From positions 25,730,001 through 25,794,000 of the forward strand of contig OZ076413.1 in NCBI GenBank assembly GCA_964187785.1: DNA of 64,000 nt, given 5' to 3'. The notes beneath the pieces are model-generated. The model saw only the letters and a list, made by a program, of their open reading frames with translations, had not been told where the DNA came from and ran no database searches. The position numbers were made by a program, and so were the translations under genes. Position 1 is the first letter of the stretch. The number at the start of each line of letters is the position of its first letter. Shown here in pieces: positions 24,663 to 55,360 of this stretch. This DNA comes from Amphiscolops sp. MND2022. Lineage: Eukaryota.

Positions 24663-24667
24663 GAAGG

Positions 24668-29315: not shown

Positions 29316-32300
29316 TTAGAGGTTATGAGCCGAAAAGATGTTTGTAATCATCCTTTCTGTTAATTAAAACAGAGAACATTAAAAGAGATTGGGCAACTGA
29401 ATGCAAGCAATGGAAATCAACAAATTGGAGGTAAGTCAACTTTAAGTATCTATCACACCTTGATCGCACCGAAAATTTAACAAATGGAAACAATTGACTG
29501 TCAATAGAACAAATGGTATAACAACTGAATGGATGAATTTTTTGTTGAAACTCCCCATTTTACGGTGCTATGTCAAGGTCACAGATAGTTTTAGTCAAAA
29601 GTGCTGTTTTCATTTTCCCAAGAGATTTTGTTAGCAGATATGCCAGCATTCTTTTGATAGGTAAAAATTTTAGTAAAATTTGGCCTTTTCCTGTTTTTTT
29701 TTCCTGAAGGAAGAAAAATTTTATGGCAAAACGCTTCGTCTTGCTATGAATCATCGAGTGTTTGCTCAGAGCTACGCGTAATTGATTGTCAATAAACACG
29801 CTCACTGGTTTAGACACACTAACTACAAGCTCACTCAACACATCACAAACCTACGTAAACTCCCGTACAGCAACAGTTTAAGCATTTTGACTTCAGTTTC
29901 AGCTGTTGACCGTGCAACACTAGCTGGCAACTTACTCGTCCAACACACTCAACCACTCACACTATTCAATTTCACACATACACCACTCGTACTCTTTCTC
30001 AATGTCAACTCACCCACCGAATTTGCATCAGCGAAAGTACACACAGACACACCACCTTCACACATTCTAAACACGAGTTCATGTTGGAAACTGCTCAAAA
30101 GGCATGAGCAATGTCAGGAGCACTGCTAAGTGCTAAGTAGTTTAAACTACCAATTAATCCTCTGAAGTCTCTTCGTTTGATCATGCTTCGTTCGTCATTT
30201 TGCTGTTGTTGGTTACTTTCTCGATCAAACGGTGTTTTCTGATAACGGACTTCGTACTGATTTACACTCTTCCATGTTGAAGCGTTTCAGAAGATCGTCA
30301 ATGTACTTCTCCTGACTCACTGCTATTTCACCTTCTTTAACGTCTAATTTCATCCAGAGAAACCAATGTAAAGAACTACAGCACACAACACACAAATCAT
30401 CACCAGTTCCTCGAACAAACAAGCACTTGTTATTTATACACGTCTGGAATCCGACGTCTCTAGGAACAACTTCAGTGTTATACACCAGTTGTGACAAGAC
30501 TGTTTAGGTCCGTATAAAGCCTTGCAATTTAAAATACTCTTGGTTACCTTCGTTACTTTTCAATTCGATGCGTTCCGGTTGTTCCAAATAGACTTTTTCT
30601 TCTTTGTCTGCATTCAAATATGCTGTAGATGTCCATATGTCTTGGTTGCACTTGATACTGCGCTGCAAGGTTCAACAGAACTCGTATCGTGGACATTCTT
30701 GCGGTTGGTTAACAGGTTTTGAAGGAATCGCGACCCTCAACTTGTGAAAAACCTTTCGCAACAAATCTCGTTTTGCATTTCTTGGAATTTCCCTCTTGGT
30801 TGTGTTTCTTAGTGAAGTGCCATTTTCTTTCAGTGGCTTTGTTCCTTTCGGTAGTTTCTCTAATGTCCAAACTTGGTTGCTACAGAAGGAGTCGAAATCA
30901 GTTTTCATTGCTTGTTTCCTTTGAGGATCTTTCAATGCTTCTTGAACGGAACTTGGTAGCTTAGTAACAGTCTGACTTGGTTCCTTCTTTGCACTGAATG
31001 ACACTTCATCGCCTACAACAACATGACCTTGATTGGACGGGATGTTGCTCGCACTTGGGTAACCTTGTTTGGATCTAAAGTAAAACTCATCCTCATTGAA
31101 CCTCACACTTCTTGTTTTGATGATCTTGGTAGCACTGTTTTCCTCTGTTCCAACTACGTACGATTAGCTGTTCTCTGCGAAACCTAGAAAGACTCCAACT
31201 TTTGCTCTTTCGTCGAATTTTCTTCTAAACTGCTTCTCTACGAAACTATAAATTTTGCAGCCAATTACTTTGATGAAGCTCAAACTTGGCTTTTCACCGT
31301 TCATCCTCTCATACGGTGTTTGCTTTGTTGCTGCCTGTAAGAGCAAGTTTTTGATGTAAAATGCATACTTTAGTGCGTATTTCCAATATTCTTTGTCCAT
31401 GTTGGCGCGATGGATCATAAACCTCGCCCTTCCACAAATGGTTCCCCAGACTCATTTCTCCGCCAACAAACTCATTCGCACAGTTATGATAACACTTGGT
31501 TGCCGTATAACCCCAGAGTACTGCTCAAATTTCGCAGCCACTCCGTCGCGGTTTTTCATGTAGTAAATTTTCCCGTAGCGATCTTGGAATCCGATGGCTT
31601 ACCTATGACCATCCACCAAAACTGGTGCCACATAGTCCAATGTCTTTTTGGCCCACGTAACGCACTCCTGGAAACAGTTCTTTTTTGACTTTGTTAACCT
31701 CACACACTTCACACACGAACACGTCATATTTACACACTACCATTCCAACAAGATACTCTTTCAACTTTTTCAAATCCTCACAGTTATTATGACCAAGTCG
31801 ATCATGCCACTTACTTAATTTACTGGAGAGGGACGTCTCATGCTTGGTTGCTCTCAAATGTGGCACTATTCTACAAACGAATAAAATGTTTTCATGCTCA
31901 ACGCTAGGTTTCTGTCGTACGCCGTCACGTAAAAAGCATCGTTCAACTCCACTCTTCTCACGTTACATTCACTATCCTTCACACAGAGGACAGCACGGCC
32001 TCTTCCACGCAGTTTGGACTCCGTTTTGTTAGCAAATCCTACTACGTTTTCTATCTTCTCATTTAGTTCTGTGAACAGCTTCCTGTCTTTGATCAGTTGT
32101 TCCGTGCAACCACTATCCACCACCAAGTCATTGTTACTCACTTCAAAATCCTCTTTTGCAAAGAATGAAAATTGGATCTCGTCATTTTCACCTGAATCAT
32201 TTTGCTGCACAGCTAACCTCGCCTCATCGGTGCCTTGATTGCGTCGGTTTCTTCTCATTTTGAAACAGGTGTTTAAGGTGTGTCCTTTTCTCTTACAGGT

Positions 32301-33871
32301 TTTACAAAATCGTTCCGGCATTCGATATTTGCAATCGCGGGATGTCACGTGCCAAGGACAGTCCTTTGCTATTTGTCCCAGTTTAATGCATTTGAAACAG
32401 ACGCAAAAATGCCCGAAACCCTTGGTTTGCTCAGTATCTGCTCTCTCTTTTTGTTACACTCAAATTGTTTGTGACCTGGTCCTCCACAGAGAACGTGGTC
32501 CTTCACACGGAACCACTGAGGAACGTGGTTTCTTCTGCACTTCGTTTCCTTCGGTAGATGTCGAAACTTATCAGATCTCTCTTCACCTCACCCAAAGTCT
32601 TTGTTTATTTGGTACACTTTACGAGGGCACAAAATGTCTCGAACTCCTTGGGAAGAACTTTTAAACAAATTGATTTACACCTTAGCCCGCTCAGCGCTTC
32701 CTCCATTTGACCTAAATTGTATTGTCGGCCTTCAGCTCGCGTTATGTAATCAACAATGGCTTCATTTTGACCTTTTCTAAATGAGGTCAGTTTTTCAATC
32801 AGCTGCTGCAACCGACGACGCTCAAGGCTCTTAAAACTGTCAGACAAAGCTTTCCACGCAGCTGGACCATCACCTTTGTGAAATCTCACGAACACTTTTT
32901 ATCCAAGCATTGTAACAATTCACACCATATTTTATACTTTTTGCCTGCAAAAACTTTTTTGTCTGCAAAATAACGGCTGCTTTTTCTCTGCTTTCCATTG
33001 CTTGTTTTTGATATACAAGACTCTACACCTCGACTCCCATTCAGCACACCAAACAGTCTAACAAACACATCCTAGCCTCAAACTGTTCACAAACCTTAAC
33101 AAAGTCATCTCTTCTCTCCTCGAAAAGTTGGGAATCTCCATGTTCTTTTGCGCACTCACAGCCATGACAGTTAAACATGCAGCACTCGCTACAAACACTC
33201 AGATATCAAATTTTCATCGAATTTTTCAAATCAATATTTAAACAAAAACATTAGGCAGCCTTTTTTTCTATTTTGGAATGAGAACAAGTTAATTCCTCTC
33301 CGGGAATTCTGCTACCAAACCACAAGTGATTTTATTTCACTACTGTTCAATCAAACAGTTGGAAATCCTATTTTATGTTATGTTTCATTATCGAGAAGCC
33401 AAATGAAAATAGTTTTTTGCAGGAAATCGTTTTTGAGGGGAATTTCTTATATGATGAGGGCACTAGTTTATTAAAGAATTCAATGTTTTCGTAATAGTTT
33501 CAAAAGTTTTTCAGGGCTCAAAAAGTTTTCGTGAGGATGTTAATGTGGCTTCTCTAATGTACCAATAAATCACTAGGGACCACAGACTCAAGTGGAAACG
33601 TTCTGGGCCTATAACCTTGGGGGTTATGAGCTGAAAAGATGTTTGTAATCATCATTTCTGTCAAGTAATATCGAGAACTTTAAGAGAAATTGGGCAACTG
33701 AATGGAAGCAATGGAAATCAACATTTTGGAGGTAAACTGACAATTTGGAGGTACAACTTTAAGTATGTATCACACTTTGATCGCACCGAAAATATAACTA
33801 TTGGAAACAATTGACTGTGGAACAATGGAACAAATGATATAACAACTGAATGGATGAATCTTTTGTTGAAA
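29316..33871 (-). mobile_element. Decayed Ty1/Copia LTR retrotransposon
   Basis: Knuckles (CFKC..GQIAKDC, CKTCKRKGHTLNTC), protease VVDSGCT, WHDRLGH..CEVC, integrase YWKYAL..TPYERMNGEKP..IGC, RT, RNase H ..LLTKSLG in Copia PR-IN-RT-RH order; repeats ~29316-29550 and ~33617-33871. Confidence 0.9.
33603..33616 (-). promoter_or_regulatory. Copia-type internal tRNA-iMet primer-binding site
   Basis: Minus GGTTATAGGCCCAG vs GGTTATGGGCCCAG of Drosophila copia, directly after the LTR. Confidence 0.75.
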
Positions 33872-33991
33872 CTCCCCGTTTTTCGGTGCTATGACAAGGA
33901 CACAGAAAATCTTAGTGAAAAGTGCTGTTTTCATTTTCCCAAGATGTTTTGTTAGCAGATCTGCCGGCATTCTGTTGGTAGGTAAAATTTT
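33872..33991 (-). pseudogene. 3' end (RNase H tail + PPT) of a second Copia copy
   Basis: MPADLLTKHLGKMKTALFTKIF..GGGGAG, homologous to 29551-29666. Confidence 0.8.
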
Positions 33992-34907
33992 GTTGTTCTT
34001 GTTTCAGATTACTTGGATGACGATTACATTGCTTCTTTCGCCTCTCAATGGGGTTAGTAAATCGAACGTCAAAGTATTTATTTCCTATGCATGTTGATGT
34101 ATCACGAACCCGGTTACGAATTTTGATTTTGAGCTTACAAATGGTAGGATTTCAACCTTCGAAAGTAATGATTGTACCGTGATTTATATAAATGTAAAAA
34201 AAACTGATTTGTATGTAATTTGCGTCCGGTCGACTGCATAGTGGCTGGTTTGAGTAGTCTGTTGGTTGTTTTTTTTGTTACTGGTCTACTGGTATAGTGG
34301 CTGGTATGGGGCCCCTACTTTCGTTGCAGACCACGGGTGTGTGTCTCCTCCCCCCAACATGATGATACACATGATACACTTGATTGATGACGAATATCCG
34401 TGATATCTGATAAAGAGAAAGTTAAAAAAATTTGCGTGAATAATCGTGGGCATTGAAGCAATTTCTGACACACGCGGCTTTTAAAAACTTGAAGACAGCG
34501 GAAAAAGTTTTTAAAGTATATTGAACTTTTAAACCGTGGTCAGTGCTACAAGATAGATCATAAGTATACTATAGTCTCTACAAAAATGAAGCTACAATCC
34601 AGTTCGGTACTTCTTTAGTTTTAGCCACTTGTTAGGAAACTAAGCTTCATAGTTTTTGCAGTTCCTGGGTTTTAATTGACGGTGTTGTCCAGTTTTCCTT
34701 TGAAGGCTGCGTGGCAATGGTATTTTTTGATTCCAGTAAAATTCACAATTTCGGTCAGCTAAAATCGTCCTGGAAGTATTGTAAGCTATTCCGTTAATTT
34801 GCTGAAAATAAACGTTGTTTTGCGTTTGTGAGGTACGAATTATATCGATGAAGAGAGGTGGAAGAAGATAAATCGATTCCATAGTCACATCAAAGACAGA
34901 TTATTTT

Positions 34908-35600
34908 TGTTACGGACTACGTTCGTTCCGCTATTTTGTGTACTGCCTACTCTGACAGACTTAGTAGGCGTATAGAATCTTCTGGTCGCATTTTCCTGAG
35001 TCGATTCCGGTTCTTTGTTTCGTTTTTCTCGTTCCTAAGTTTTTGGAGTTTTAACAGTTCCTACTGAGATTCCACAAGTAGATTTTTGATTTCAGACGGT
35101 ATGTCTTCGTTTATAGACGCTCTCAACTTCTCTAACACACTGTGTCCGCCCTTGGGAGATTTTGGACAAAAAGGACCGGCTATCACCGTGTCTTGCTTGC
35201 CTAAACCTACGATTTGAACCAGAACCAGGGCAATTGGGTTTGAACTTACGATCTCTGTGATCTCCTGCTGCGAAGTCTCCCTCTTTCGGCTTCTACTTGA
35301 CATCTTTTTCAAAGCTTTTTGTTTTGTTTTGTGATTGGATGCAAATATTGTTTTGAATTTGTTTTAGCATGAGTTTGCTACGTAAAGTTATTTGTAGAAA
35401 CAGAAATGGATGCGCACATTATAGTTTACAAGTTCAAAAGTATATCTACTCGCCTAGCATCACGTGTTCATACTCGCGTACCTTAATTTCCTTCGAGATA
35501 TTCGTCATTTCTTGTGATTTCATGTCGAAACTGTATTTAGAAATCTCCAGAAACAAGTTGACATTTAGTCAATTTTCATAATCTCCCCACAGTTAGGTCA
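34908..35600 (-). mobile_element. Solo/partial Gypsy LTR containing a gag start
   Basis: MSSRSRKRETSQQE..LEKLRASINEDIPSEIKNLLVESQ; ends ..GTCCGTAACA with no PBS after it; right boundary uncertain. Confidence 0.45.
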
Positions 35601-36872
35601 TCACACATCATCATATCATTTCATTCCGGCATTGTTTTGATTTCTTTGCAGCAGAAAGTACTTCGTTTCATCAAACTGGAAATAATCCTCATATTTTTAT
35701 TGGGATTCCTCTACTGCTACTTGAATTGGCGGGGAAAACGACGCAAATCTAACGCTGGCGTAAACAACTAAGCCCCCAATTCTGATTTTCAACAGGGAAT
35801 ATTACGCATATTTGCAAAACGCACATTTTGATGATGCTAGGAAAAGGAATTAAAAACTTTTTAAAAAGAAATTAAAGAAGCAGATTGTTTTAAAATGGCA
35901 GCAATTACCATATTTCAATAGAAAGCTGCATTTATGAAAGGTACGTGTGAGCAACATTGATTAACGACGTGTTAACGTCAAGTACAATCCAAACTTAGAG
36001 TAACAAATGAGAAGCAACGGGAATTGACACAACATTTTTTATCAGGCATTTATATCGCCTAAGAGACGTACTCCATCGAATGAAACACATTACAAATAGC
36101 AGTCAGCAAATTAACTTATCAAAATTTTTTTCCATGGACTTTTGGACATGATAAAATGAGCATGAGAGATGACTTCCTTAATTCAACCATACCGAAAACA
36201 TCGTACCTTCAAGTTATTCCGAGCCTAAGTACCATGTTCTGTTCGAATTCTTTCTTGCTTGACTCACCGTCGTCACGAATCTTTGATTTCTTGAACGTTG
36301 GCACCAGTGTTCACGTATTCTTGACGTAAAATCAAATTCAGTTTTAACCTAAAAGTTGCAACTAAAGGCTGACGAAGATTCAATCTTCTTTACTGACGTA
36401 GTGTAGATTTGAATAAGCCTGGCTGAAATGTTGGTGGCGTAGCAACTACCAGCTTTGACCTATCTAACTACACCTTGACAGGACTGTGACGTCACAGGCT
36501 TATTCTCTGAACTTGTCTACGCTGTTGTGACGTCACGCATACAGTAATGTTCAACGGCGCTCCCAATAATTGTTTACACAAAGAACTTTCCTTGTTCTGG
36601 TTCGAACTAACTGCTCTTCAAACTGCAATTTAGCTGCCCTGGTCAGAAAAACCTAATGCTTGGTGGTTTGGACTTATTTTCTCTTTTGGAGTTAGCTACG
36701 GTTAGTTTCAAATGTGTATTCCAGTTATGTTTTCATTTACGTAACTGAAACCTCTGAACGAAATGCGTGATGTTCTTTCATATTTCTCTTTTGGTATTTT
36801 GTTCTTCGTTTTTCAGATTTGCCAATATTTGGCTAATCAGAGCCTGTTTTTTACCTCATTAATTTTTCGCCT

Positions 36873-37294
36873 CAACCGTGTCCGCGTTCGACCCCTACGC
36901 GTCGGCATCTACAATCCAGGCCGGGCGCGGACTATGACAATCTAGTCAACTTTCGAATTTTTTTGCCAAGTATTTTCCCTTCCCTCTAGAGTTTCTACTA
37001 TTGCTTTTCCAGGTGGTTTGACTTGAGCCATTTTCGGTGAATGCGCTAAACGAGGCTGTGTCTTGTTATTCAGTTGATTACTTAAGTAATCAACTGAATA
37101 ACAAGACACAGCCTCGTTTAGCGCATTCACCGAAAATGGCTCAAGTCAAACCACCTGGAAAAGCAATAGTAGAAACTCTAGAGGGAAGGGAAAATACTTG
37201 GCAAAAAAATTCGAAAGTTGACTAGATTGTCATAGTCCGCGCCCGGCCTGGATTGTAGATGCCGACGCGTAGGGGTCGAACGCGGACACGGTTG
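36873..37294. repeat. 422-bp DNA palindrome, no spacer
   Basis: Centre GATTACTT|AAGTAATC at 37083/37084; identical mirrored ORFs 36942-37130(-) and 37037-37225(+); no mismatch seen by eye. Confidence 0.95.
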
Positions 37295-37440
37295 TGACCG
37301 AGACTACACCGCGTACATGTAATACATGTCAGCTTTACGGTCAATGATCGTGCTACGGAATCAAAATTTCGATTCCGTAGCACGAGCATTGACCGTAAAG
37401 CTGACATGTATTACATGTACGCGGTGTAGTCTCGGTCACA
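37293..37440. repeat. 148-bp near-perfect palindrome (2 mismatches)
   Basis: TGTGACCGAGACTACACC...AAA|TTT...GGTGTAGTCTCGGTCACA, centre 37366/37367. Confidence 0.95.
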
Positions 37441-37876
37441 CAGTGCACAATTCGCTGACGCTGTGAATGATGAGGCAGCGTGTGGTTACGGTCCCATCAG
37501 TAAGCTTTAATTTCATTGGCGGCCCGGGCGAACTTAACACGTTTGAATTGGATAGCTTTATTGCATTACTGTGTTTTCTTGTTAATTTGCGTAAAAATTG
37601 CGTTTTTAATAGAAATTGCGTGAAAAAATGAAAGTTTGCGTATTGTACTCCCTCACACAAAAGTTGTGTATAAAATTTCGTTTTGGCTTTATGCAATCAA
37701 ATCTCGTTCTTGTTTCTCAGCCATCGCAGTGTTAACCCTTCTCTGAAGGTAATCCAGAACAGTTACTTTGAAACGCTGCCACTTTTCAACACTTTATCGC
37801 ATTTTTTAATGTTATCTCGATTATAACTACGATGACTATGACTAGTCATGGATGATTTCCTCGGTGGTTGGGTTGC

Positions 37877-37988
37877 TTTTTAGTCGGCGCTTCAAGAAGT
37901 GAAACGCGACTATTATAGTGACTCTTTTTTTCTTTTTTTTTTCAATCCACACGAACTGACCAAAATAATTCTTAAAAGTTCTTTATAC
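37877..37988 (+). mobile_element. 5' part of Helentron-like element C, split by element 3
   Basis: TTTTTAGTCGGCGC..CGACTATTATAGTG as in copies A and B. Confidence 0.55.
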
Positions 37989-37996
37989 TGAGTTAT

Positions 37997-38197
37997 TATA
38001 CTGATGCTAGCTAGCTGACTCTCCTAAAGCTTGGAGGTCTGAAAAGTGGTATAAAAGGAAGTCGACTAATTACTGATTATTAGTTTTCTCTCTCTGAAAG
38101 AGTAGAGATTTACAATCATTCAATATCAAATAAATGTACATTCTAGAACATTCTATAAATATCTAAATACTATTGGTTATTAATGTAGGTCAGTACA
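37997..38197 (-). repeat. 3' LTR of element 3
   Basis: TATACTGA...TCAGTACA terminal inverted octamer; preceded on minus by AGGAAACCGCGATGGA (weak PPT). Confidence 0.85.
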
Positions 38198-40353
38198 TCC
38201 ATCGCGGTTTCCTAAATAAATTAAAATTATATATAAAATTATAAAATACATTATATAAAATGAATAAAACGAAGTAAAATTTTTTGTTTAAATGTTTTTA
38301 GCGTTTCAGCTAGTTCAATTTTTCATGGATGGTTGCCAAAAGTCTCTTTTAGGTTTGTGAAAGTTCGACTCAATGGTAGACCTCGAGTTGTCTATTAAAA
38401 AATGTGACAACTTCATTAGACCTCATACGTGAGACTATAATTCAAAGGCATCAAAGTGGTCTCTTTCACTATGCTTCGGGCCAACTTTTGAATTGATAAC
38501 GGCTCGATTCTACGTCCTTATTTGACAACTCATGAGCTAATGACATATGAGTTGAAGGTCAACGAGTCAATGAGAATTCTTGTGGAAGAAGATTTTGCAT
38601 CAAGTATGAGAATTGTCTGAAAAGATTTCAGGTTGTTTTCAACTTTGGCGGGTTTGTTATATTATAAGAAATGTTGAATCCTTTGAGAAAATGTGATTCT
38701 CATTATTCGAATTGAAATTGAACAATGTGCTTGATCAAATTTTGAGCTGGTTTTGTTGAAATATTGAAAAGATTTTTGTGGGATAGAATTGCACCGAAAA
38801 ATAATATAAAAATTTTCCTTGAAAGTGTGCAAATAAATATCGGTATGGGATGAATTTCAATATAAATTGGGGCAAATAAGTATGTGGGGATTTTTATGCC
38901 AATGATTATATATAAACACATTAAAGTATAAATTATCACAAGTGTATTTTCAAAGTTTTGAATCTTTATCGAGTACAATGTTTTTTGTCTTGCTTTCGTC
39001 CTTTTTTATTTGTCGCTGTTCGTATTGTCGTCTTGTTGGATCGTCTTGGATGGTTGTTGAAATCACTGGATCGATGGTGGAATAAGCTTGGAATCACGGA
39101 TACGATGTGAGATCGTCTGCGGCAATGGGTCCAGACAGTTGATGGTGTGCTGTAGCAATTGGGATCTGTTGATGAATTATGGCATCAAAATACGATGTAA
39201 GTGTTTTGTATGGAGAATTTTGGTTGAGAAGTGCTTCAATCTGTTTGGATCATAGCGTCACATGTTTGGATAAAGATATCAGGGTGTTTGTGCAATTTAA
39301 GGTATTGCACGAAATTTATTTATTGATCTGGAATATATGAAACATATTTAAGAGGATCATTCTTGTCAAATGTGGGTCTGCCTTTTTGTCTTGTGTAAGC
39401 TGGGTATATAATGTTGACATATGTTTCTTTAGAATGAGAGATCGCAGTCGAATGGAAGCAGTTGGGAAGTCTACTATAGATGTATCATGCGAAGAAGTCA
39501 ACGTGGTGGAGTTTCAAGAGTTGAAATGAATATTCTTTGGTTATTTGTCGTTGTGAAGAGGCATTGAATCGGTGAGTTGAAGGAAGAGGAATGAAGAGGA
39601 AAGAAGTTTGACGATTGTCACCTAAAATAGATTAGTTTTCACAGTTAAATGTCCATTAAAATAGATTTTCATTCTCGACTTTGTTCTGATGTGTTTTATT
39701 GTGTTCTATCTTTTCTACTTTAAAAATTAGGATGGCGTATTTTGGAAGTCTTCTAAAGAAGATTTGAATAACTTTCATTTAAGGTCTCATTTATTGAATT
39801 CGATTCGGTAAAAGTTGAAAAATATTTACATCATGTTAAGATAAAGGTGTGTTCTATTGGTTAACATAAACTATAATCATGCATAGCAAGCATGAGTAGG
39901 TAGGTTCAAGTACTTTTGACAGTTTATTAAAGGATTAAGAGTAAAGAGTTAAAATTTTTTTAAGCGTTTATCCAATAATTACCAGTTGAGATTGTTGGAG
40001 TCTTTCAAATGTGTAGTTCATTTCATCTAAGAATGTGCGTATGCACGAAGCTGATTGGCTAACTCTTGTCGTATCAAATGCAATGTTTTGCATTAGGTCT
40101 CGGGCTTGTTCAAGTGTGCTTACAATATCAGCAATAGTATTGAGTATATCCTTTTTGTTATGTATGGTTTCAAAATTTCCATGAATTGTTTATATTTTTG
40201 TATTTCTTCAGTGGGAGGAAAACTTTCTGGTTGAAGAATGTCATTTGTTGGTTTCTTTGGAGGTTCTTGATTAGTCTTTTTGTGTTCTTTATTATTTATC
40301 TTTGTAAGGATTGAGATAAGGTGAGAAATAATGAATAATAGTTCATTATAGGA

Positions 40354-41278
40354 TTATCCCTTTTTGCTATGGCGTGCGTGATAATAGGGTTTTTCACAGT
40401 CTCCACGAAGTTGGGAGGTTATGGGTTGAATTGGAGGAAGATGATCTGATATACATTGGAGAATATCTTCTTGTAATAGCGAGTCATCATTTAAGATGAG
40501 GTATTCATGTGGTACTATGATTGGTCTTTTTGGGTTGTCATTTGGAAGGAAGAGAAAGCTTTGTTTTAATGGGTCGGAAATTCTGAGTTTTCCTTTTATT
40601 TTGGTATGGTCTATTAGATAGTCTGAGTTAAAATAAAAAAGGTGAAGTAAAATTCGAATTGAAGAAGAGATAGTTTTCAAGTTCTTTGTTATGGAAGAAT
40701 TTTTGGTATGTAATATGATGGGCTTTCTTTATTTGGTATGGCAAGAAATTAGCGTCGTTCTCTTCGGTTCTAAGATCATATGGAGATAGTCTTAGGAAAT
40801 TGTTTTGAAGTGAAAAAAATTTCACTTTATTGTTTAACCACCAATCATATGGGGTGATTAATTTTGAAGCGATTGAGGTATGGTAATCATTTTTGAACTC
40901 TCTGATGATAAATCTGTATTTCGTTGGGATCACATACAAAGAGGTTAGATGGGATTGAAATGTGAATTGCCTTGATGATAAGATGGGAACTAGATCACAG
41001 TCTCGATCTTCATCTTGTTTTGATGGCTTTATGAAAGGAGGGCAAGCGCCAGATTCCATAAAACATTTATCGGCGGTTAGATCTGGATATTTTCTTTTTT
41101 GACATTTTGCGTTTATATGATCAATTTTATCTACTGGAATAGTTTCCATGGGTTCTTGATTTTGTGAAGTTGAATTATTATCTTCGTTAAAATTTTGTTG
41201 TTTTGTTATATTCGAAGGGGATGCAAGCAAATCGGAGGGACTAGAGTTATTTACATCAATTTCAGGCAAGGATTCCAT
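40354..41278 (-). pseudogene. Post-env accessory ORF of element 3, unknown function
   Basis: 216-aa ORF plus an overlapping 108-aa ORF (probable frameshift), with the same strand and N/K/S-rich composition as the element's other ORFs. Confidence 0.55.
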
Positions 41279-41713
41279 TATTCTTATTTGCGTGATTTTG
41301 TAGCTCTCAAATAGTGATTGTGTTTGAACGAATGAAATGGTTAAGTTTGAACAAATGAGAGAGTTAAAATTTTTAAATATTTTTGTTACATATTTTTTGT
41401 TTATTCGTTTAGAGTTTTATAGAAAATAAAAGTTTAAATTGTACTTACAATATTGGAAAAACATCAACAATCACAGTGGTATCTATTCCCGGAATGAAAA
41501 CTTCTGTAATTTTTGTTATTCGCGGTTTTTAGGGAGAGAAGAATCTTTCCAAGTGGAGTATGAAGTTCCAAGTGAAGTCGTTTCAGGTTGAGTTGAGGTG
41601 GGCTACTGTCCAAGTGAGAATTTTTTGGGGAAAATGAAAGTAGAATTGTGGAGTGATTCGTTGTCGGTTTTTGTAATTTGAGCTTTGTTTTATTTGGTGA
41701 TTACGTTTTTCAG

Positions 41714-44254
41714 TTAGGAGGAGTTAATAAAGACTTTAGCGGGGCTTTCCGGTAAAGCTATTACATTTTGTATTACGGTGTCGTAGTCCTGGAGAATTTG
41801 AGATGATTTAATATCGTTAATATTGTTTAGGTGTGTCTTTTTTGGTAATTGAAGGGTCGAATTCTTACTTTTATATTTAGGAGGTAAATAACGGGAGTCA
41901 TTATCGGAGTATCTTCTCATTCTCTTGTGTTTTCCTTTTTCGGATGACAGGATGATATCAGTTTCACTTGTGGTGATTTTGTGTTTAGTATATATCCTTT
42001 TGCGTTTTCCAGTATTATTCAAATCGGTAACCATTTCCGATGTAACTATATTAAAAAATCCATGGGCTATTGAACTCAAAATGGAAATGTTGCTTTGGAG
42101 ATTATATTTTATGCTAATTGTTCTGTAGAATTTAAGTAGGAAAGTTGAAACTTCTCTAATTAAAAGAAAAGGGGAGAAATATATTGCACATTGTGTTAAA
42201 ACATAACATGGGTATCCAAAGTAATTATAGAAAGCTTGACTAAACCAGTCAGGGTTAAAAAGTGGTAAAAGGTTTAACAGGTGATCATGTAATCCAATTC
42301 TTAAATGATTGTAGGGATTTGATCCTGTGTGGGAGTGTTATTCATTGTGTACTGTAACGAAATCATAACCTAATGATTTTCCAAGTAATTGGAGGGTTGT
42401 ATCTGAGTGTTCTGCGAATAATACCATGTTCCAGATTTGGTCTAATTCAGCATTTGAGTATATACCGGCATCTTGAGCGGTAAATGTATTGGGTGTTATT
42501 GGTGTCTTAATTTGAGTAGGTTTGAACATTTGTGGTGCTTCTCTTTTGAGCGGGTCTGGTGATAACACATAAAAATCTCCGTCATCTGTTTCTGGGTCCA
42601 ATTCAATAATATTTTGTGGGTTATTTCCACATTCAATTGGTGTTGCATAACTAAGTTTGTCTTGTTATGGGGTCTACATTATAGTTTCTCTACAGTGTAT
42701 GGGAATTCTATCAAAGCATTTATCTGCTCTGTATAGAGGTGATATAAAAAGAGGACAATCATACAGCTATGCCGTAGATCCTTCAACATAGAGGAAGTTA
42801 CTGCGATTTCCAGTTAAAAGAAAACAGGCTAATTGAGGATTCTTAACTGACATAGCTTAGATTGTTAACAAATGTGTTCTTTCTAATTCACATACTGTAT
42901 GAAGAGTGGTTAATTCTTGTACTGTCATTGATTTATATACATGATTTATTGTGAAATCATTTTTTGTTTTGATATGAGCATCATAGTCTAGAGTGGCGAA
43001 GTTGTTTGATACATTTAGTGCAGGGAATATATACTTCTTATTACAAGTATCAAATTGTATCTTTCGACTAATTTTTTCATCAAATTTTGATTGTGGTTTT
43101 GGTTGTCCATTGTTCATATCAAAACCTTCTAAGTATGTAACAAAGATGTCGTCATATTGTGTTGAACATAATGGTTCTGGTTTTCCACAAAAGGTTTGTG
43201 CAATTGGATATATCTCAAATCAAGAAAGACTTTGATTGTCTACGGTTGATTGTGGTGTTTTGACATTGGGATATTTTGTTCCCTGTATTCCTTCGATTTG
43301 AAGGTTTTGTGTAATGTTTGAGGATTCGAAAAAGTTATCAGTTTTTATCCAAAATCGGTCTTTAATCTTTGTCATTCTTCCAATGAATTCTTGTAATCGA
43401 AAAATGAGGCAAAATCTTTCATCAAACCATGTCGATGTGTATGGGGTTCTTGTTGTTGGTTTACAAAATCCATCTGAATGATAACATTTTAGGAAATATC
43501 TATCGTGAATGATTTGTTTGTTTTTATCATCATATAATATTTCAGCATAAGTTATTCTGAGTTTCCAACTTTTTCGAGTGATTAAATGTTCTCTGTCGCT
43601 TCTACATCTTGAATAGCTATTATGTGTGAAGTTAACTATCCAGTCTTGGTGATGTTCATCATATACGAACGTTCCAATATGCCAAGCATTTAATTTTTCT
43701 ACTCTGAATGGTTTTTGAATTTGTTCAATTTTATTTTGGTAATCACTATTATTGAAAAATGAGAAGGAACTTTGTATATTGTAATTGTTCAGTTCGTTAC
43801 TATCGGTTGCGTTTAAATAACTTATGATATTTTTGCACTCAATAGGGTCAAGTATATTTGGAAGTTCTAATGTATTTTGTCCCCAGTGTAAACGATCATA
43901 TCGTCTACTAGATGTAAATGTTTGGGAACACCAAACTTTTTCGGTTTTTATATATGCTTCACATTTGAAGGCTTTGATTCTTGTTGCTTTTGCTCTTACA
44001 TATACTGTTGCTTGGGTTTTTGTGTGTTGTATATCTGAGGGTGCTTGTTTACATGGTTCAACATTTAGTAAGCTAAACTGTCTTAAGTTGTTTTGTTTTG
44101 CACAGTCAAAATGGGATACCATAAGATTCAAGAAATTTGGGTCTTGTTCTGAAATATGATTTTCTGGATTTGTTGTTTCAACTTTAGGAACTGATGTAGA
44201 GTTAACTATGTTTATTATATATGCAATATATGTAATGAAAAGTACGTTTATCAT
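41714..44254 (-). pseudogene. env: env-like glycoprotein, chuvirus-G/class III fusogen-like
   Basis: Hydrophobic N-terminus MINVLFITYIAYIINIVNS; HFDC..N...SLLNVEPC...CEAYI....WC; CYHSDGFC...W....C; late hydrophobic segment FYNYFGYPCYVLTQCAIYFSPFLL..SIAHGFFNIVT. Confidence 0.7.
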
Positions 44255-45495
44255 GGTTAAAATGTAGTTCTATATTTAAGTCCTGAGTAGGAATTAAAAA
44301 AGTTTATATGACCTGTTCTAATTTCTGGTAATTCTGCGTCACAAAGATTAGATATCGATGTGACCAAAAATAGTGAGGGTGTTGTTTTATGTGCTATTCT
44401 TGTTGAAAGAGAAAATGGATGAGGTTTTAAGGAGTTGAACGTAACTTCAACTACGAATTTTAATACTAATTGATCTTCTTGTAATCTTCGTAGTTCTCTT
44501 TGTTTTCATGAGTTTGAGAGAGAACTATTGTTTATAAATCTAGCAGGGAGTACAGTGTATCGAGGATCTTCGTTAAGAGTACGCATAATCTTTGAGTTAA
44601 CACGAATAGGGTATTCGTGTGGGTTTGGTGTAGGAGGTTGCGAATCTTCTTCTAGAAAATATTCGGGCAATTGTATGGATGAATCAGATAGTATTGAACT
44701 AGGTGTATATACTCGTGAAAATTTGCGGCACTATCTGAAATAGTTTGAGGATCTTCTGAAAGAAGAGATGCAGATTCAAATCCTGATGTGACTTGAAATG
44801 GTAATGATAGACAAGATGGTATTGTGGGTTGAGATGAGTAAAGAGAAGGAGTTTCTGATCTGGGTTGTGCTTGTTGCCTAACTAGTCTTGAGTTTGTACT
44901 AGAACTAGTTAAAGTTTATAATTCTTGAGAATGTTCTCGTGATTGGGATCTGAGGTTATAATTATGTCTTGGTACTCTGGTACTAGCAGTCGAATCAGAG
45001 TCTTTATATTTGTAATATAAGTCTGTTAAAGAAGAAGTAGTGGTTGATTGTAGGCGTTCTAGTTTTGGATAGATTTGAGAAAATGTAAATGAAATGTGAG
45101 TGTATTGTTGTTGAGTTGTTATGATATTATGTGGTTGAGTTGTTATTACTGATGTTTGAGTTTGAAGTATTGATGTATTATTGGGTGTCTCTGTTGCTCT
45201 ATCAGGAGAATATGGAGCAGATGGGCTATGGTTTGAGGATGAGGAATCCAGTATGTCTGTGTCTGAATTTAGATATGCGGTATATTCAGGTAGTGTTTGG
45301 AATGAACGGGTTGAACTAGATGATGAATTGTTTCTGTTCGATGAAAGTGAGTATCTATGTCTATCAATCTTGAAGTATTTTTATTTTAGCACTGTATACT
45401 TCAGTCTTTGTTTCAATGATACTTCCTTTTACTATCTCTTTTTAATAATTCTTTATTCAGGCTACTATCTATTACTATTTATCTCAAACTTTCTT

Positions 45496-48400
45496 TCAGC
45501 AGAATTTTTGAGAAAATGAAAGTATATCCTTTACACCGAGGGAAAGTCGATAGTCTATTCGTGGTTGTGGGCGGAAATTGTATCTGTCATATGTGAGTCT
45601 ACGGGGATTAATATAGTTATCGTAGTCATGAGTATCAGATTGGTCTTCTGGTTTGGTATTATTGGTTATTTGTTCATTTTGTTGGCGGGAGTGGGGAGTG
45701 GGGAGTTGGCGGAGTTTATTTTGTTGCCAGAAATGGGGAGTATTGGTTAATTGGTTCTTGTTGAAAATCAATTGTGGATGGTAAATTCGTTTCTTTATTG
45801 GAATTTGTGAATCTGTGGTCTGCGTCTTCAACTGATTGTTCTTCATCGGAAAAAGAATCAAAAGGTTTCATTGGGTCATTTATATTCGAATCTTTACTAT
45901 CATTATCATCAGCATTTCAATGTGGATTAAATTGTTGTGTGAAAGAAAAAATGAGTGGTTCTTTTGGGTAGTAAGGAACTAAATGGTTTCTATGAATATG
46001 AGAAGGGTAACCATCTTGATTAACAATTTCTTATCTGATATCAGAAAATTTTTTAATGATTTTAAATGGTCCAATTCTAAGTGGTTTCAATTTATCCGAA
46101 AAATGAACATGGAGAAAATTTCTTTTAAATACAAAGGTATCAATGTCTAAGGGTCTTGGATTGTTGTATGTTTTATTGAAATAAGCAAATGAAATAATTT
46201 TTTTGTGTGTTTTCATAGACAGTGTGATAGATTCGTATCATAGCAGTTTCAGTAGCCAAAATTCATTGTGGAATTGGTTTTGATAAGATTTTGTAGAAGA
46301 AAGTATCTCTTTGAAGATTCAGTTCAAAGTTAATTGGGATTCTTGGTATAGTATGAAATACTCTTTCATATGGTGAAAGATTTAATTCGAGAAGTGGTTG
46401 TCAATTATGTGCATAAGCGTACATATGGACTTGGGTAGACCAGTTTTCTGGTTTGTTATGTAGAAAAAGTCTGAGATGGGTTCCAAGGTTTTTGTTTTGG
46501 TTCTTTACTAAACCATTTGTCCATGGTGCGTAAGGAGTTCTTGGTGAATGCCTGATTCCCATTGTGGTACAAAGGTTTGCAAGTTCAGAATTAAGGTATT
46601 CTGAACCACGATCTGTTACCAAAAATATGGGGGGTCCAAGTTTGGTAATCCAATGATGCAATAGGGAATTAACAGCGTTTTGAGCATTGTTTTGTTTAAC
46701 AGGTACTGTTACTACAAGGTGACTAAAGGCGTCTACAATCACATGAATGTATGAGTTTTGTTTTGATAGAGGATTTATAGGACCTTTTGTATCCATTGAT
46801 ATTCGGTAGTTGGAATACGAAGCATTTTCTGAAAATGTTTGTATCAATGCAGTTTGAATTTTTTTATTACTGTGTTTGCTTTGTTGACATTCAATACAAT
46901 CGTGAACACAACGAAACAAAATTGATTAAAAGCTTTTATGGATATTTTAATTCCTGATTGTCCATTTGCATGAAGTTTATTGAAAGCTGCATGAAAGAGT
47001 TTAAATGGTGAACATATTTTGTCTTTTTGATTTGGGTTTGAATGATGAAGGTTAGGATAATCTATATGAATGATCTTTGTATCATGATTAATGTACAGTT
47101 GATTGAAGAGTTTGTAGTGAACTGATAGGAAAGAATTACTTGCTATTGTTGGATCTATTTGTAGAGGTCTTTCATTAGTCTTTAACCAATGGTAAACTTT
47201 TTGTATGACCGGGTCTTGTTTTTGTTGGGATTTTATAGTCTCAATTGTTATTTGAGTGTCTTCTGATAAAAAGAAATAATGAAAATTTCTTTTGTATTTG
47301 AAGAAAGGTAGATCAAAAAATGGAACTTGTTGATTACAGTAATGGGATTTAGTGGGGTGCTGTATTGCTAGTGTTTGTTCTTTCAATGTGTATAGGGTTT
47401 TGATTCTTTGTATTTTGTGATTGATTTGATTCGTCTTCATCACTAAAAATATCAGTGTCATTAAGGATAGTTGAATGTTGCAAAAGTGATTTTGTTTGAT
47501 TCTTTGTAGGTCTCTTGAGTTTAGATTCAAATGGAACAATGGATTGGAAGGAAAATGAATCTAAGGGTTTCATTTGAATGTCTTCTCCTTTGTTGTTTAT
47601 ACGGATGGAAAATTGGTCTTCGCCATAGTCAGCGAGAATTGGATGGCAATTATTTTTTTATTATATTTGATTTCTTCATGTTTTACTAAATAGTGTACGG
47701 GTTTGAGTTTTTGAGTTGGTTATATTTCATGATAGAGAAATCGATTTGGGGTGGCAATTGTTTGTGTCGCAATTGATGTATTTGAAGTTGTTCTTTCGTG
47801 AAAGTTCTTGAAAGCATGTCTGCTTCAATTAAAGTTTTTCCAGGGGTATGAATGATTTTTAGTTTGGAAAATTTTGTTAGTTGCATTTGTGCTCTATGAA
47901 ATCTAGGACTAAGGTTTCCCTTTTTCCAAAACAGTGTAAGAAAGGTTTGTGATCTGTGAAGATGTATATTGGATGCAGGAATCCAAATATGAGAATTTCA
48001 TATCTTTGTAATGCATAAACTCTTGCGAGGAGTTCCCTGTCTAGTGTTGAAAGTTTTTGTTCTTGTATATTTAGGATTCGTGAATTGTAAGGAATAACTC
48101 TCTTTTTTTCTTCATTCATCTGGAATAGGACTGCGCCTAAACCAACTAAGGAAGCATCAACTGTTATGAAAAATGGGTGTTTTTTTTTGGGTATGGTTAA
48201 TTCAGTTTCTGCTGTCATTGCGTTTTTAACGTCTTGAAATATTTTTTCTAATTCGGGTGTCCATTGAAATTTAACATCATCATGTAATAAAGTATAAAGT
48301 GGTTTGAGATTTATATGCAGTTTTTCAACGAATTTTGAATAAAAGTTTACGCTGCAAAAAAATTGCATAACATTCTTTTCTTTTGGTGATGGGATTCTTT

Positions 48401-50300
48401 GGATGGCTTCGAATTTTGATGGTATTGGTTTAATTGTGTTGTTCCCTATTTCATGTCCAAGTAATATTACTTTAAATAACATGTAAAATGCTTTTTCAGG
48501 TGCAAGTTTGAGGTGTTCTTTTGTTGCTATTTTGTGGAGTTCTTTGATAAGTTCAAACATTTCTTGTTTTTCGTCTGCTAATAGTAATATATCATCAATA
48601 TATACTAACGCAGAACTTTTGTCTATAAGTGATCGAAAGAAAGTTGACATTTGTTTTGTGAAAACATTTGGGAGTCCTTTTAATCCATAGTATCTACGGA
48701 TAAGGGTATACAATTTATCTCCGAATGAAAATCCTGTAAATCTGATTGTTTCTTCGTCTAATAGGGTATGAGCGTATGCATACATTAAATCAATAGTTGA
48801 TTTGTATTTTTTGTTAGCTCTAGCTAATTGAGGGGCTAAAGGTTCAATGGGCCAAGATTCAAGTTCTTGATTAGTGTTTGAGTTTAAATGTCTAGCATCT
48901 AGAACAACTTTTGTTGCGTCTCTTTTGGGGAAAATGATTAAAGGGTTTAAAAATGTTGTTCCAATAGTGTTTTTTTCATCTGGCGTGGAGCGAATTTCGT
49001 TTTATTATATTTTGTTTTTCAAGTTCTACTAAGAGTTTATTCATTCTATCTCTGTATTGAATTGGTAATTCAGAGGGTCGTTGTGTTTGAAGTTTACAGT
49101 TTTCTTTAATTCGAATTCTGAATAAAGTTGAAAATTTTCCATTGCATTTCGGTGTTTAGTGTAACAATTTGGGTTGTTAATAAGGATATTGCAAAAGTTG
49201 ACATATTCAGTATCAGTCAAATTTGAATTTTCGAAGTTGAACTTTTTTACAATATGCTGATTTTCTGCAGTATTTCGTAGTGAAGGAAAATCTTTTCTAA
49301 TATTATCGAAAGGTCGAAGACTTCCTGTGACAGAAGGCATGGGTAATTGAAGTGTTTTATCATTTATTTCTTTTGTGTTGATTTCTATGAAAGATTGTGG
49401 AATTACTCGAGTACATAATTTCATAACTGTATAATCATTTTGTCTAATTGGAATAGTAGTATCAGGATGATAGGCATGTATTACTGTATGAATAAGCGAG
49501 TTTACATCATAAACTCTATAATGAGGAGGTGTTGTTTGAGTAATAGGGATTTCTATATATCCAATAATTCCTCGTGGTAGTGTAGCTGGATGAGATGTAA
49601 CATTTTGAATTATTGTTGAGCAGGAGTCTTTGCTTTTGTCGTTGAGGATCATATCTAAGAAGTGAAAAACATCTTTAAAGTTTTGTACGAAGTATGTATA
49701 TGGAATTGATGGATAAATCTTAGTATTATCTTCCAGTTCAAATTGCAAGTTGAGATAATTTTTGATTGGGAAATGTATAGTCTTTCCTGATCTTGGTTTG
49801 AAATGAATTGGTTCCTCACATTTAATAGTATAAAAGTATGAAACATATAGGTAATCTTTTTCTGTAAACGTCGAAAAATGTGTTTTTGTAGGGAGTTTTG
49901 GATGTTTTTGTAGGGAGTTCTTTATAATAATTTTGGATCATAATTTTTTGTTGAAAGTCTATTTTGTGGATATGTTTCTTGAAGAAAGGTGCTCAAAGGA
50001 TGTTGTATTTAGTATTTGCTACCGAAATTCGATATTGAAAGATCGATTTTGATGATATACTTCAGTAAAACATGTCATTGAAACATAATTTATTATTGGT
50101 ACTTCAGTTTGATTTGCAACTGTAAGAGTTTTTGCTCTTTTGTTCTTAATATTCTTTGGAACATTGAGGAATAATTGTTTTGCAATTACATGAAATGTCG
50201 GTAAGTTCAAAACTGATATAGAAGCTCCAGTACCTAAGAGGAATAGGATTTCTAATTTTGAAGGTTACTGGTTGTCTTTTCCTTCAGAAGCATGTATATA
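45496..50300 (-). pseudogene. pol: pol of element 3
   Basis: FLLGTGASISVLN (mutated DTG protease), YGLKGLP..VYIDDILL (RT), VDASLVGLGAVL..ELLA..TDHKP (RNase H), SMDTKGP..DAFS..TDRGSEY..WTNGLV (integrase). Confidence 0.92.
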
Positions 50301-50416
50301 TAGTGGATAAAACCAACTATAAGGAGTAATTGCATTTGCAGTTTCAGTTATTTGGCATGTTTGAATTTCAAATTTAGTACTATCTTTGTCGTTGGTATAT
50401 TTAACATCTACTTAAT

Positions 50417-52714: not shown

Positions 52715-52770
52715 GGTTTGTTTTGTTGTTTTATCTGGTTTGAAAAAGTAAAGATGTTCATTTTGTTTAC

Positions 52771-55282: not shown

Positions 55283-55360
55283 CAGAACTGTGTCACTGTG
55301 GATAAATCAGTCTGAAAAGAAGAGCAGAACTGTGTCACTGTGGATAAATCAGTCTGAAAA
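55283..55360. repeat. Two perfect 36-bp direct repeats (period 42) in the element 3 leader
   Basis: CAGAACTGTGTCACTGTGGATAAATCAGTCTGAAAA at 55283 and 55325. Confidence 0.9.

What the first reader, a model, noticed from the sequence alone, without database searches (positions are those of the whole stretch)
36873..37440. Two abutting giant palindromes (422 bp perfect + 148 bp near-perfect)
Spacer-less palindromes this long are normally unstable, and here two unrelated ones overlap by 2 bp with no TSD, no transposase and GC-rich outer arms. The geometry is what replication through a covalently closed hairpin end produces (parvovirus-type or linear-replicon telomeres), or the terminus of an unknown foldback or rolling-hairpin element. 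Mismatches in the second argue for some age; the flawless first could be recent, gene-converted or an artefact.
Basis: partly seen in the sequence, partly recalled or inferred. Interest (0 to 1): 0.7.

Follow-up and report, generated by a model that had tools for sequence, protein, structure and literature searches.

The report
Two abutting palindromes: likely repair scar
A flawless 422-bp and a near-perfect 148-bp DNA palindrome do sit back-to-back in a transposon-filled stretch of an unidentified eukaryote's genome, and the sequence fits scars of fold-back DNA-break repair better than a virus-type hairpin telomere or a transposon.

Summary
P1 (36873-37294) is a 422-bp, 100% perfect, spacer-less palindrome. 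P2 (37293-37440) is a 148-bp palindrome with two mismatched pairs. They share 2 bp. Neither has a target-site duplication, an internal 'ear', an iterated motif or a second copy in the window. No protein family of any kind is detectable in the 4-kb gap that holds them, which lies between two decayed LTR retroelements. No match was found in viral, phage, plasmid, prokaryotic or metagenome DNA collections. The boundaries are asymmetric in composition. Only P1's left edge is a sharp discontinuity (GC 0.34 to 0.63, CpG 2 to 10). P2 runs seamlessly into a rare GC/CpG-rich right flank. The best reading is that P2 is older and native to its flank. A later break 211 bp to its left was then repaired by fold-back (hairpin-primed) synthesis that stopped at the base of the P2 hairpin and was end-joined to the other side. 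Confidence is about 0.4. Rivals are capture of a small doubly hairpin-capped DNA, palindromic transposons, and an assembly artefact. The only other assembly found is base-for-base identical and probably the window's own source, so read-level confirmation and genome-wide copy number remain untested. The parvovirus-type reading failed every test available here.

The parts
36873..37294 (.). P1: 422-bp perfect spacer-less palindrome (arms 211 nt; centre between 37083 and 37084)
36873..37083 (+). Arm A of P1. In the preferred model this is the newly synthesised fold-back copy of A'
   Evidence: Its left edge is the only sharp compositional discontinuity: GC 0.34->0.63 (0.5% of background positions reach this), CpG 2->10 (0.03%).
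37084..37294 (+). Arm A' of P1. In the preferred model this is the native sequence that lay left of P2 and served as template
   Evidence: Inference from the boundary asymmetry. The A'|P2 boundary is only borderline discontinuous (dGC -0.17, 5% of background)
36872..36873 (.). Left flank | A joint: proposed end-joining junction that captured the fold-back copy
   Evidence: composition jump; no TSD
37293..37440 (.). P2: 148-bp near-perfect spacer-less palindrome (arms 74 nt; 2 mismatched pairs, one of them a CpG-to-CpA change in the left arm)
   Evidence: hairpin dG -89.9 kcal/mol, z -25.3
37293..37294 (.). 2-bp overlap (TG) shared by P1 and P2. It is read as junctional microhomology and/or the point, 2 nt into the P2 stem, where copying stopped
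   Evidence: An overlap of 2 bp or more arises by chance about 12% of the time, so it is only suggestive
37441..37545 (.). GC/CpG-rich right flank, compositionally continuous with P2. It is taken as evidence that P2 is native to this side
   Evidence: P2|flank dGC +0.01 (91% of background positions differ by at least as much). 100-bp windows this GC- and CpG-rich are 1.7% of the window and 0 of 11,930 outside the LTR elements

Best explanation
The pair is a scar of hairpin-mediated (fold-back) repair of chromosome breaks, made in place and in two steps. P2 came first. Its right arm is native sequence continuous with the right flank. Its left arm is most likely an earlier 74-nt fold-back copy. 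Later a double-strand break occurred about 211 bp to the left of P2. The right-hand end was resected, and its 3' strand folded back on itself at a short self-complementary tip. Alternatively, the end was hairpin-capped and opened far from the tip. The strand was then extended by copying itself. Copying ran 211 nt and stopped at the foot of the very stable hairpin that single-stranded P2 forms, 2 nt into its stem. The new strand was unwound and joined to the other broken end by end joining, and the gap was filled. The result is left flank | A (new) - A' (native) - P2 - right flank. Shown: the anatomy, the absence of a TSD, the boundary asymmetry and the hairpin stability. Inferred: the break, the polarity (which arm is the copy), the stop at the P2 hairpin and the order of events. 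No function is implied. If transcribed, the locus would give a long hairpin RNA.
For: (1) Both palindromes are spacer-less and abut to within 2 bp. Independent events would not land so exactly, so one must have set the limit of the other or both arose together. (2) Of the three outer and inner boundaries, only left flank|A is a strong compositional break (dGC +0.29, background fraction 0.005; CpG 2->10, fraction 0.0003). P2|right flank is seamless (dGC +0.01). The right flank's composition is rare locally (1.7% of 100-bp windows; 0/11,930 outside LTR elements). This is what the model predicts: one new joint on the left and native continuity on the right. (3) There is no TSD for P1, P2 or the pair. 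There is no transposase or any Pfam family in the 4-kb gap and no other copy in the window. (4) P2 folds at -89.9 kcal/mol, a credible barrier to a polymerase copying single-stranded template. (5) P1 has 0/211 mismatched pairs and P2 has 2/74, one of them a CpG transition. This agrees with P2 being older. (6) The mechanism is documented. In yeast, one break end is extended from a fold-back and the copy is captured by the other end through NHEJ or alt-EJ, with 0-5 bp of microhomology (median 2 bp) and inversions of 2 to about 150 bp (PMC11724301). Snap-back synthesis occurs at breaks in Drosophila (PMC5728401). Fold-back priming and hairpin-capped ends are reviewed in PMC7999016.
Against: No ancestral or 'empty' allele could be examined, so the polarity rests on composition alone. 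The A'|P2 boundary is itself borderline (5%). A 211-nt fold-back copy is longer than the ~150 bp maximum reported in the yeast amplicon study. Documented fold-backs usually leave a loop or spacer, whereas both palindromes here have none. That requires a short pre-existing palindrome exactly at the tip, or a covalently closed hairpin end. The age difference is not significant (p = 0.067). Genome-wide copy number is unknown: the collection's gene caller called nothing over the palindromes, so my ORF-based searches for other copies were blind. The stop at the P2 hairpin is an inference.
Confidence: 0.4

Rival explanations
1. Capture of a small pre-formed hairpin DNA. The 568 bp equal A + reverse complement of D + B', where D is one 283-bp segment (B' followed by A, sharing CA). 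This is the sequence of a doubly hairpin-capped ('dog-bone') 283-bp DNA, or of its replicated circular inverted dimer, opened at one point with 2-nt redundancy and ligated into a break. The source could be a replication template-switch by-product or, in the most exotic version, a mini-replicon with hairpin telomeres (parvovirus-type or another rolling-hairpin element).
For: The topology follows exactly from the coordinates. It explains both palindromes, the lack of spacers, the 2-bp overlap and the single GC-rich core straddling the opening point with one entity. The left boundary is sharp. There is no TSD. Dog-bone and inverted-dimer intermediates are described for ODIRA (PMC10766183). Capture of extrachromosomal fragments at breaks is documented (PMC11724301).
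Against: It predicts that both outer joints are new, yet P2 is compositionally seamless with a locally rare right flank (a coincidence of 1.7% or less). Both palindromes would be the same age, which is mildly disfavoured (p = 0.067). For the viral or replicon version, there is no Rep/NS1, capsid, protelomerase or polymerase signal in the gap. There are no ears and no iterated motif. There are no hits in IMG/VR, phage, plasmid, GTDB or JGI metagenome DNA.
Confidence: 0.13
2. Palindromic non-autonomous transposons (MITE or foldback type). P1 and P2 would be two elements, or one composite element, whose arms are long terminal inverted repeats.
For: The region is saturated with mobile elements. 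GC-rich ends with an AT-rich middle, and sizes of 148 and 422 bp, are MITE-like. Copy number in the genome could not be measured.
Against: There is no TSD for either element or for the pair, although P1 is flawless and therefore young. The arms contain no tandem subrepeats. There is no second copy in 64 kb. The exact abutment of two unrelated elements is unexplained. The two ends of the pair are not inverted repeats of each other. P2 is continuous with its right flank.
Confidence: 0.15
3. Sequencing or assembly artefact: fold-back chimeric molecules or reads incorporated into the consensus.
For: Fold-back reads without any intervening sequence exist in long-read data (PMC12870357). The only matching assembly is identical to the window and probably is its source, so nothing independent supports the structure. 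P1 is suspiciously flawless.
Against: The site is about 50.7-51.2 kb inside a 217,552-bp contig whose label reads 81x. Fold-back artefacts are per-read events at random places. They were virtually absent from HiFi data and about 0.6% of ONT genomic reads, so they should not win a deep consensus, least of all twice at one spot. P2 carries two substitutions, one of them a CpG transition, as real decaying DNA would.
Confidence: 0.14
4. One break, with both ends folded back. The ancestral sequence would be left flank-A followed directly by B'-right flank. Each end made its own fold-back copy, and the two copies were joined through the TG microhomology.
For: It explains the two spacer-less palindromes, the 2-bp overlap as junctional microhomology and the missing TSD in one event. 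It uses the same documented enzymology.
Against: It predicts that the left flank and A are native neighbours, but that boundary is the sharpest discontinuity in the region (background fractions 0.005 for GC and 0.0003 for CpG). It needs two long fold-backs in one repair event.
Confidence: 0.08

Closest known systems
Fold-back (snap-back) inverted duplications at repaired double-strand breaks (yeast hybrid Pol delta + NHEJ pathway, PMC11724301; Drosophila SD-MMEJ, PMC5728401; foldback inversions, PMC7467729 and PMC10622511)
   Same: An inverted copy of the sequence next to the break, one native arm, 0-5 bp of microhomology at the capture joint, no TSD and no protein-coding requirement.
   Different: Reported local events are mostly under 35 bp and at most about 150 bp, and they usually keep a loop. 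Here the arms are 211 and 74 nt with no spacer, there are two of them in series, and one appears to be limited by the other.
Human palindromic AT-rich repeats (PATRR11/22/17; PMC4940405, PMC1851657)
   Same: Chromosomal, near-perfect palindromes of several hundred bp without a spacer, unrelated to one another in sequence, expected to extrude hairpins or cruciforms and to be fragile.
   Different: PATRRs are more than 90% AT. P1 is 47% GC with CpG-rich ends. PATRRs are not reported as abutting pairs.
ODIRA 'dog-bone' / inverted dimeric circle intermediates (PMC10766183)
   Same: A self-complementary closed DNA whose duplex form carries two palindromic junctions. The 568 bp have exactly that topology when opened at one point.
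   Different: ODIRA units are kilobases long, carry an origin, have interrupted inverted repeats at the junctions and integrate by homology to give inverted triplications. None of that is seen here.
Parvovirus-type rolling-hairpin telomeres and protelomerase- or poxvirus-type hairpin telomeres (from general knowledge of these systems, not from a tool)
   Same: Terminal palindromes of about 100-400 nt that exist as hairpins and become perfect duplex palindromes when copied. The two ends of one genome can be unrelated in sequence.
   Different: There are no replication or capsid genes nearby, no internal asymmetry ('ears', bubbles), no iterated binding motif, no inverted flanks, no match in viral collections, and P2 looks native to its flank.
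Foldback (FB) elements and palindromic MITEs
   Same: Long inverted arms with little or no middle, non-coding, located in TE-rich DNA.
   Different: There is no TSD, no tandem subrepeats in the arms, and no second copy in the sequence available.
Replication template-switch mutations that create perfect hairpins de novo (PMC8794818, PMC10710096)
   Same: A perfect inverted repeat created in one step by copying the opposite strand nearby.
   Different: Described events are tens of bases long and keep a loop. Here the scale is 5-10 times larger and there is no loop.

Membership tests
Parvovirus-type (rolling-hairpin) telomeres | Replication initiator (Rep/NS1, HUH-SF3) and capsid genes between or beside the terminal palindromes | tested here: not met
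   No Pfam family at E<=1 in any of 10 ORFs of the 4-kb gap 33992-37987. The neighbours are LTR retroelements.
Parvovirus-type (rolling-hairpin) telomeres | Internal asymmetry in the hairpin (small internal palindromes or bubbles giving flip/flop forms) | tested here: not met
   P1 is 100% symmetric. P2 has only 2 point mismatches. The only internal inverted repeat lies at the outer end of arm A (36880-36932, 79%), not at the axis.
Parvovirus-type (rolling-hairpin) telomeres | Iterated short initiator-binding motif next to a nick site | tested here: not met
   No 5-mer occurs more than 3 times in arm A or more than 2 times in B', and the frequent ones are T-runs. There are no tandem repeats. 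This is a weak test, because the motif of an unknown virus is unknown.
Parvovirus-type (rolling-hairpin) telomeres | Sequence relatives among viral genomes | tested here: not met
   Four exact 22-30-mer scans of IMG/VR gave 0 hits. blastn against phages gave no match. Exact-match scans miss diverged relatives.
Hairpin-telomere linear replicons (protelomerase or poxvirus type) | The replicated-telomere palindrome is flanked by inverted copies of the adjoining genome; a resolvase or protelomerase gene is present | tested here: not met
   Neither palindrome extends outward. The flanks are unrelated. No such domain was found.
TIR transposons / MITEs / Foldback elements | Target-site duplication flanking the element | tested here: not met
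   A scan with +/-6 bp slack for TSDs of 3-12 bp found only chance 3-4-mers for P1, P2 and P1+P2.
TIR transposons / MITEs / Foldback elements | Multiple dispersed copies in the genome | not testable with these tools
   There is none in the 64-kb window. The genome itself is not searchable by DNA here. ORF-based searches were blind because no gene is called over the palindromes.
TIR transposons / MITEs / Foldback elements | FB-type arms built of tandem subrepeats; transposase in autonomous relatives nearby | tested here: not met
   There are no tandem repeats in 36873-37440 and no transposase domain in the gap.
Fold-back repair scar (hairpin-primed inverted duplication at a break) | One arm native and continuous with its flank, the other arm ending at a new joint | tested here: inconclusive
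   Composition supports it: only left flank|A is a sharp break, and P2|right flank is seamless. This is indirect evidence, and no ancestral allele was available.
Fold-back repair scar (hairpin-primed inverted duplication at a break) | 0-5 bp microhomology at the capture joint, no TSD | tested here: met
   There is a 2-bp overlap and no TSD. The 2 bp could be chance (about 12%).
Fold-back repair scar (hairpin-primed inverted duplication at a break) | Size and loop as in documented events (2 to about 150 bp, usually with a spacer) | tested here: not met
   P2's 74-nt arms fit, but P1's 211-nt arms exceed the reported range and neither has a spacer (PMC11724301). I therefore file it as a variant, not a typical member.
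PATRR-type chromosomal palindromes | Several hundred bp, near-perfect, no spacer | tested here: met
PATRR-type chromosomal palindromes | More than 90% A+T | tested here: not met
   P1 arm GC 0.47, P2 arms GC 0.45-0.47.
Long-read fold-back artefact | Supported by single chimeric reads, typically at read midpoints or contig ends | not testable with these tools
   Reads are not available. Indirectly, the site lies more than 50 kb from either end of a 217.5-kb contig labelled 81x.

The most novel reading that the evidence does not exclude
The 568 bp are an integrated, unfolded copy of a tiny (283-bp) DNA closed by a hairpin at both ends. This would be the minimal form of an unknown rolling-hairpin or hairpin-telomere replicon, or a defective mini-genome of one, caught in a eukaryotic chromosome.
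Probability: 0.06. Interest if true: 0.8.

Novelty: new variant of a known kind. Interest (0 to 1): 0.4.

Why it matters
Long perfect palindromes are among the most fragile sequences known, and how they arise in natural genomes is poorly documented. Most of what is known comes from engineered yeast, tumour genomes and a few human PATRRs. If the preferred reading is right, this locus is a natural germ-line example of fold-back repair on a scale (211 nt, no loop) beyond what amplicon assays have recorded. It would also show one palindrome setting the limit of the next, that is, a fragile site that grows by repeated breakage and hairpin repair. That would give a concrete, checkable route to PATRR-like structures. 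If instead the arms prove to be multi-copy, or the structure is absent from reads, the locus is an ordinary MITE pair or an artefact.

Tried and rejected
1. ORF-based searches for other copies. I tried exact look-ups and homology searches with the 61-aa ORF across the P1/P2 junction, the 62-aa ORF across the P1 centre and the 86-aa ORF abutting P2. All were empty. They turned out to be uninformative, because the collection's gene caller calls nothing over the palindromes even in the matching contig.

2. Exact-pattern DNA scans of IMG/VR (4), GTDB genomes (2) and JGI metagenomes (2), plus blastn against plasmids and phages. All gave 0 hits.

3. Independent assembly. The ENA contig proved identical and collinear with the window, so I withdrew it as independent support.

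4. Repeated-family test of the surrounding gap. The three called ORFs there are singletons at 90% identity, so no paralogous 'empty site' was available.

5. tRNA-like or other RNA reading of the GC-rich arm ends. ARAGORN and Rfam found nothing.

6. Resemblance of P2's arm to the sequence beside two upstream TGTGACGTCAC motifs. The local alignment score was at the null mean. Only the shared 6-mer half-site remains.

7. Right flank as a Tc1-type transposon end. No inverted partner was found within 4 mismatches.

8. TSD left by an excised transposon at the palindrome centres. The last bases of A and the first bases of B' do not match beyond 2 nt (read).

9. The TTAA at P1's axis as a piggyBac-type hairpin signature. 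Any perfect palindrome has a self-complementary centre, and P2's differs, so I rejected it as chance.

10. The organism could not be identified. There are no named protein hits and the sample accession appears in no paper.

Full report
**What is there.** The window is eukaryotic and consists almost wholly of mobile-element remains.

- It has few long ORFs, no tRNA or Rfam hits, GC 0.38 and CpG o/e 0.87.
- A Ty3/gypsy-type element with ~2-kb LTRs lies at about 8097-24663 on the minus strand.
- A decayed copia-type element lies at 29321-33991 on the minus strand, with LTRs 85% alike.
- A second gypsy-type element lies at 37988-55881 on the minus strand, with 210-bp LTRs 95% alike.
- Further LTR-element fragments lie at 1-8 kb and a LINE reverse-transcriptase fragment near 61 kb.
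- The palindromes sit in the 4-kb gap 33992-37987 between the copia-type and the second gypsy-type element, 548 bp from the latter's LTR.

**The observation.** It is correct to the base.

- P1 (36873-37294) is 422 bp, with arms of 211 nt, 100% complementary, and nothing between them.
- P2 (37293-37440) is 148 bp, with arms of 74 nt, two mismatched pairs and nothing between them.
- They share the dinucleotide at 37293-37294, and neither extends outward.
- The region folds at -383.5 kcal/mol against -84.9 +/- 6.7 for shuffles. P2 alone folds at -89.9 kcal/mol.
- The rest of the window has no excess of short palindromes, so this is a local event, not a property of the sequence.

**What it is not, as far as could be tested.**

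- There is no target-site duplication around P1, P2 or the pair.
- The arms have no tandem subrepeats, no iterated short motif and no internal 'ears'. The only internal inverted repeat is a small one at the outer end of arm A.
- The arms are unrelated to each other, to the flanks and to everything else in the window.
- No ORF in the gap matches any Pfam family even at E<=1.
- Short exact patterns from four parts of the unit found nothing in IMG/VR, GTDB genomes or JGI metagenomes. blastn found nothing in plasmids or phages.

**Other assemblies.** An ORF 3 kb away led to ENA assembly ERZ25074608, contig ctg183054_81x_l (217,552 bp).

- Two fetched stretches of it equal window 30628-51278 and 1691-22443, at 100% identity with no gap and exact collinearity.
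- The window is therefore almost certainly positions 24095-88094 of that contig, reverse-complemented, or a product of the same reads. I do not count it as independent confirmation.
- It does show that the palindromes lie more than 50 kb from either contig end. My reading of the label '81x' as coverage is an inference.
- Fold-back read artefacts are per-read events. They are virtually absent from HiFi data and about 0.6% of ONT genomic reads (PMC12870357). Two of them winning a deep consensus at one spot is unlikely but not excluded.
- The gene caller called nothing over the palindromes in that contig. My protein-based hunts for further copies therefore say nothing about copy number.
- The called ORFs of the gap are singletons.

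**The discriminating result.** I compared 70 bp on each side of every boundary with all other positions of the window.

| Boundary | GC change | Background positions with as large a GC change | CpG change | Background positions with as large a CpG change |
|---|---|---|---|---|
| Left flank \| A | 0.34 to 0.63 | 0.5% | 2 to 10 | 0.03% |
| A' \| P2 | 0.63 to 0.46 | 5% | 10 to 6 | 8.6% |
| P2 \| right flank | 0.49 to 0.50 | 91% | 6 to 4 | 43% |

The right flank's composition (GC >= 0.52 with >= 7 CpG per 100 bp) is itself rare. It occurs in 1.7% of windows overall and in none of 11,930 windows outside the LTR elements. P2 therefore looks native to its right flank, and the only clear new joint is at the left edge of P1.

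**Models.** The 568 bp can be read in three ways.

- (i) Two-sided fold-back at one break. This predicts that the left flank and A are native neighbours, which the data contradict.
- (ii) An opened 'dog-bone'. The unit equals A + reverse complement of D + B', where D is one 283-bp segment (B' then A, sharing 2 nt). That is the sequence of a doubly hairpin-capped DNA, or of its replicated inverted-dimer circle, cut once. However, it predicts two new outer joints, so the seamless right side would be a coincidence of 1.7% or less. It also predicts equal ages.
- (iii) Serial fold-back. P2 is older. A later break 211 bp to its left was repaired by fold-back synthesis on the right-hand end. The synthesis copied A' and stopped at the foot of the P2 hairpin, and the copy was end-joined to the left flank.

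Model (iii) predicts exactly one sharp boundary, on the left. It also predicts exact abutment, no spacer-independent TSD, a perfect P1 beside a slightly decayed P2, and GC-rich 'outer arms' as copies of one GC-rich block. All of these are observed.

The enzymology is documented. One end is extended from a fold-back, and the copy is captured by the other end through NHEJ or alt-EJ. Microhomology is 0-5 bp (median 2 bp), and inversions run from 2 to about 150 bp (PMC11724301). Snap-back synthesis is known in Drosophila (PMC5728401), and hairpin-capped ends and fold-back priming are reviewed in PMC7999016.

The weak points of model (iii) are these:

- The size of 211 nt exceeds the reported range.
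- The complete absence of a loop needs a short palindrome at the very tip or a covalently closed end.
- The age difference is not significant (p = 0.067 that both mismatched pairs fall in P2).
- The polarity rests on composition only.

**Verdict.**

- The feature is real in the sequence and far beyond chance.
- It is most likely a real chromosomal structure: about 0.85 against about 0.15 for an artefact.
- It is most likely a fold-back repair scar made in place (0.4 for the serial model, about 0.5 for in-place fold-back of any kind).
- It is less likely a captured hairpin DNA (0.13) or transposons (0.15).
- The parvovirus or linear-replicon reading is not supported by any test I could run, but it survives as a small part of the capture model.

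It is not a PATRR by composition (47% GC against more than 90% AT; PMC4940405), although it should behave like one physically. I rate it a new variant of a known kind, with moderate interest. Read-level support and genome-wide copy number would settle it.

Noticed in passing
window 36486-36495 and 36527-36536: Two copies of a 10-bp palindrome containing a CRE-like core (GTGACGTCAC), 41 bp apart and 350-400 bp left of P1. These are the only two in the window. Their half-site, extended by one T, equals P2's outermost 6 nt, and 3 of the window's 16 TGTGAC sites fall within 800 bp here. The adjoining sequences do not align above chance.
   Followed up: partly
window 1-55881: All four LTR-type elements or fragments (about 1-8 kb, 8.1-24.7 kb, 29.3-34.0 kb, 38.0-55.9 kb) lie on the minus strand. 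Only the LINE fragment near 61 kb is on the plus strand. Same-orientation stacking of gypsy-type elements recalls uni-strand piRNA clusters. With 5 elements this is not significant.
   Followed up: no
window 43220-44254 (-), inside the LTR element 37988-55881: A 344-aa ORF gives a weak, sub-threshold Pfam hit to a Monjiviricetes viral fusion glycoprotein (E 1.7e-4, 20.1 bits against a cut-off of 27). It may be an env-like gene in an unusually long (17.9 kb) gypsy-type element. Its pol region is split over several ORFs. I did not count the breaks.
   Followed up: no
window 14077-15933 (+): A 618-aa ORF with no Pfam match lies antisense to the first gypsy-type element, in its GC-rich, strongly GC-skewed interior. 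It is probably a composition-driven spurious ORF.
   Followed up: no
window 8097-10121 and 22588-24663: The LTRs of the first element are about 2 kb long, 94-98% alike, and each holds an ORF of 186-248 aa without a Pfam match.
   Followed up: no
L002 11654-12154 (-) = window 39125-39625: The collection lists a 166-aa product here, but the stretch has 7 stop codons in the standard/bacterial code. The gene caller evidently used another genetic code or frame, which is a caution about gene calls on this contig.
   Followed up: no
window 11553-11643: A (TTA)30 microsatellite lies inside the first LTR element.
   Followed up: no
window 37081-37086: P1's axis is TTAA within CTTAAG. P2's axis is AATT. 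I judged these to be chance, since any perfect palindrome has a self-complementary centre.
   Followed up: yes
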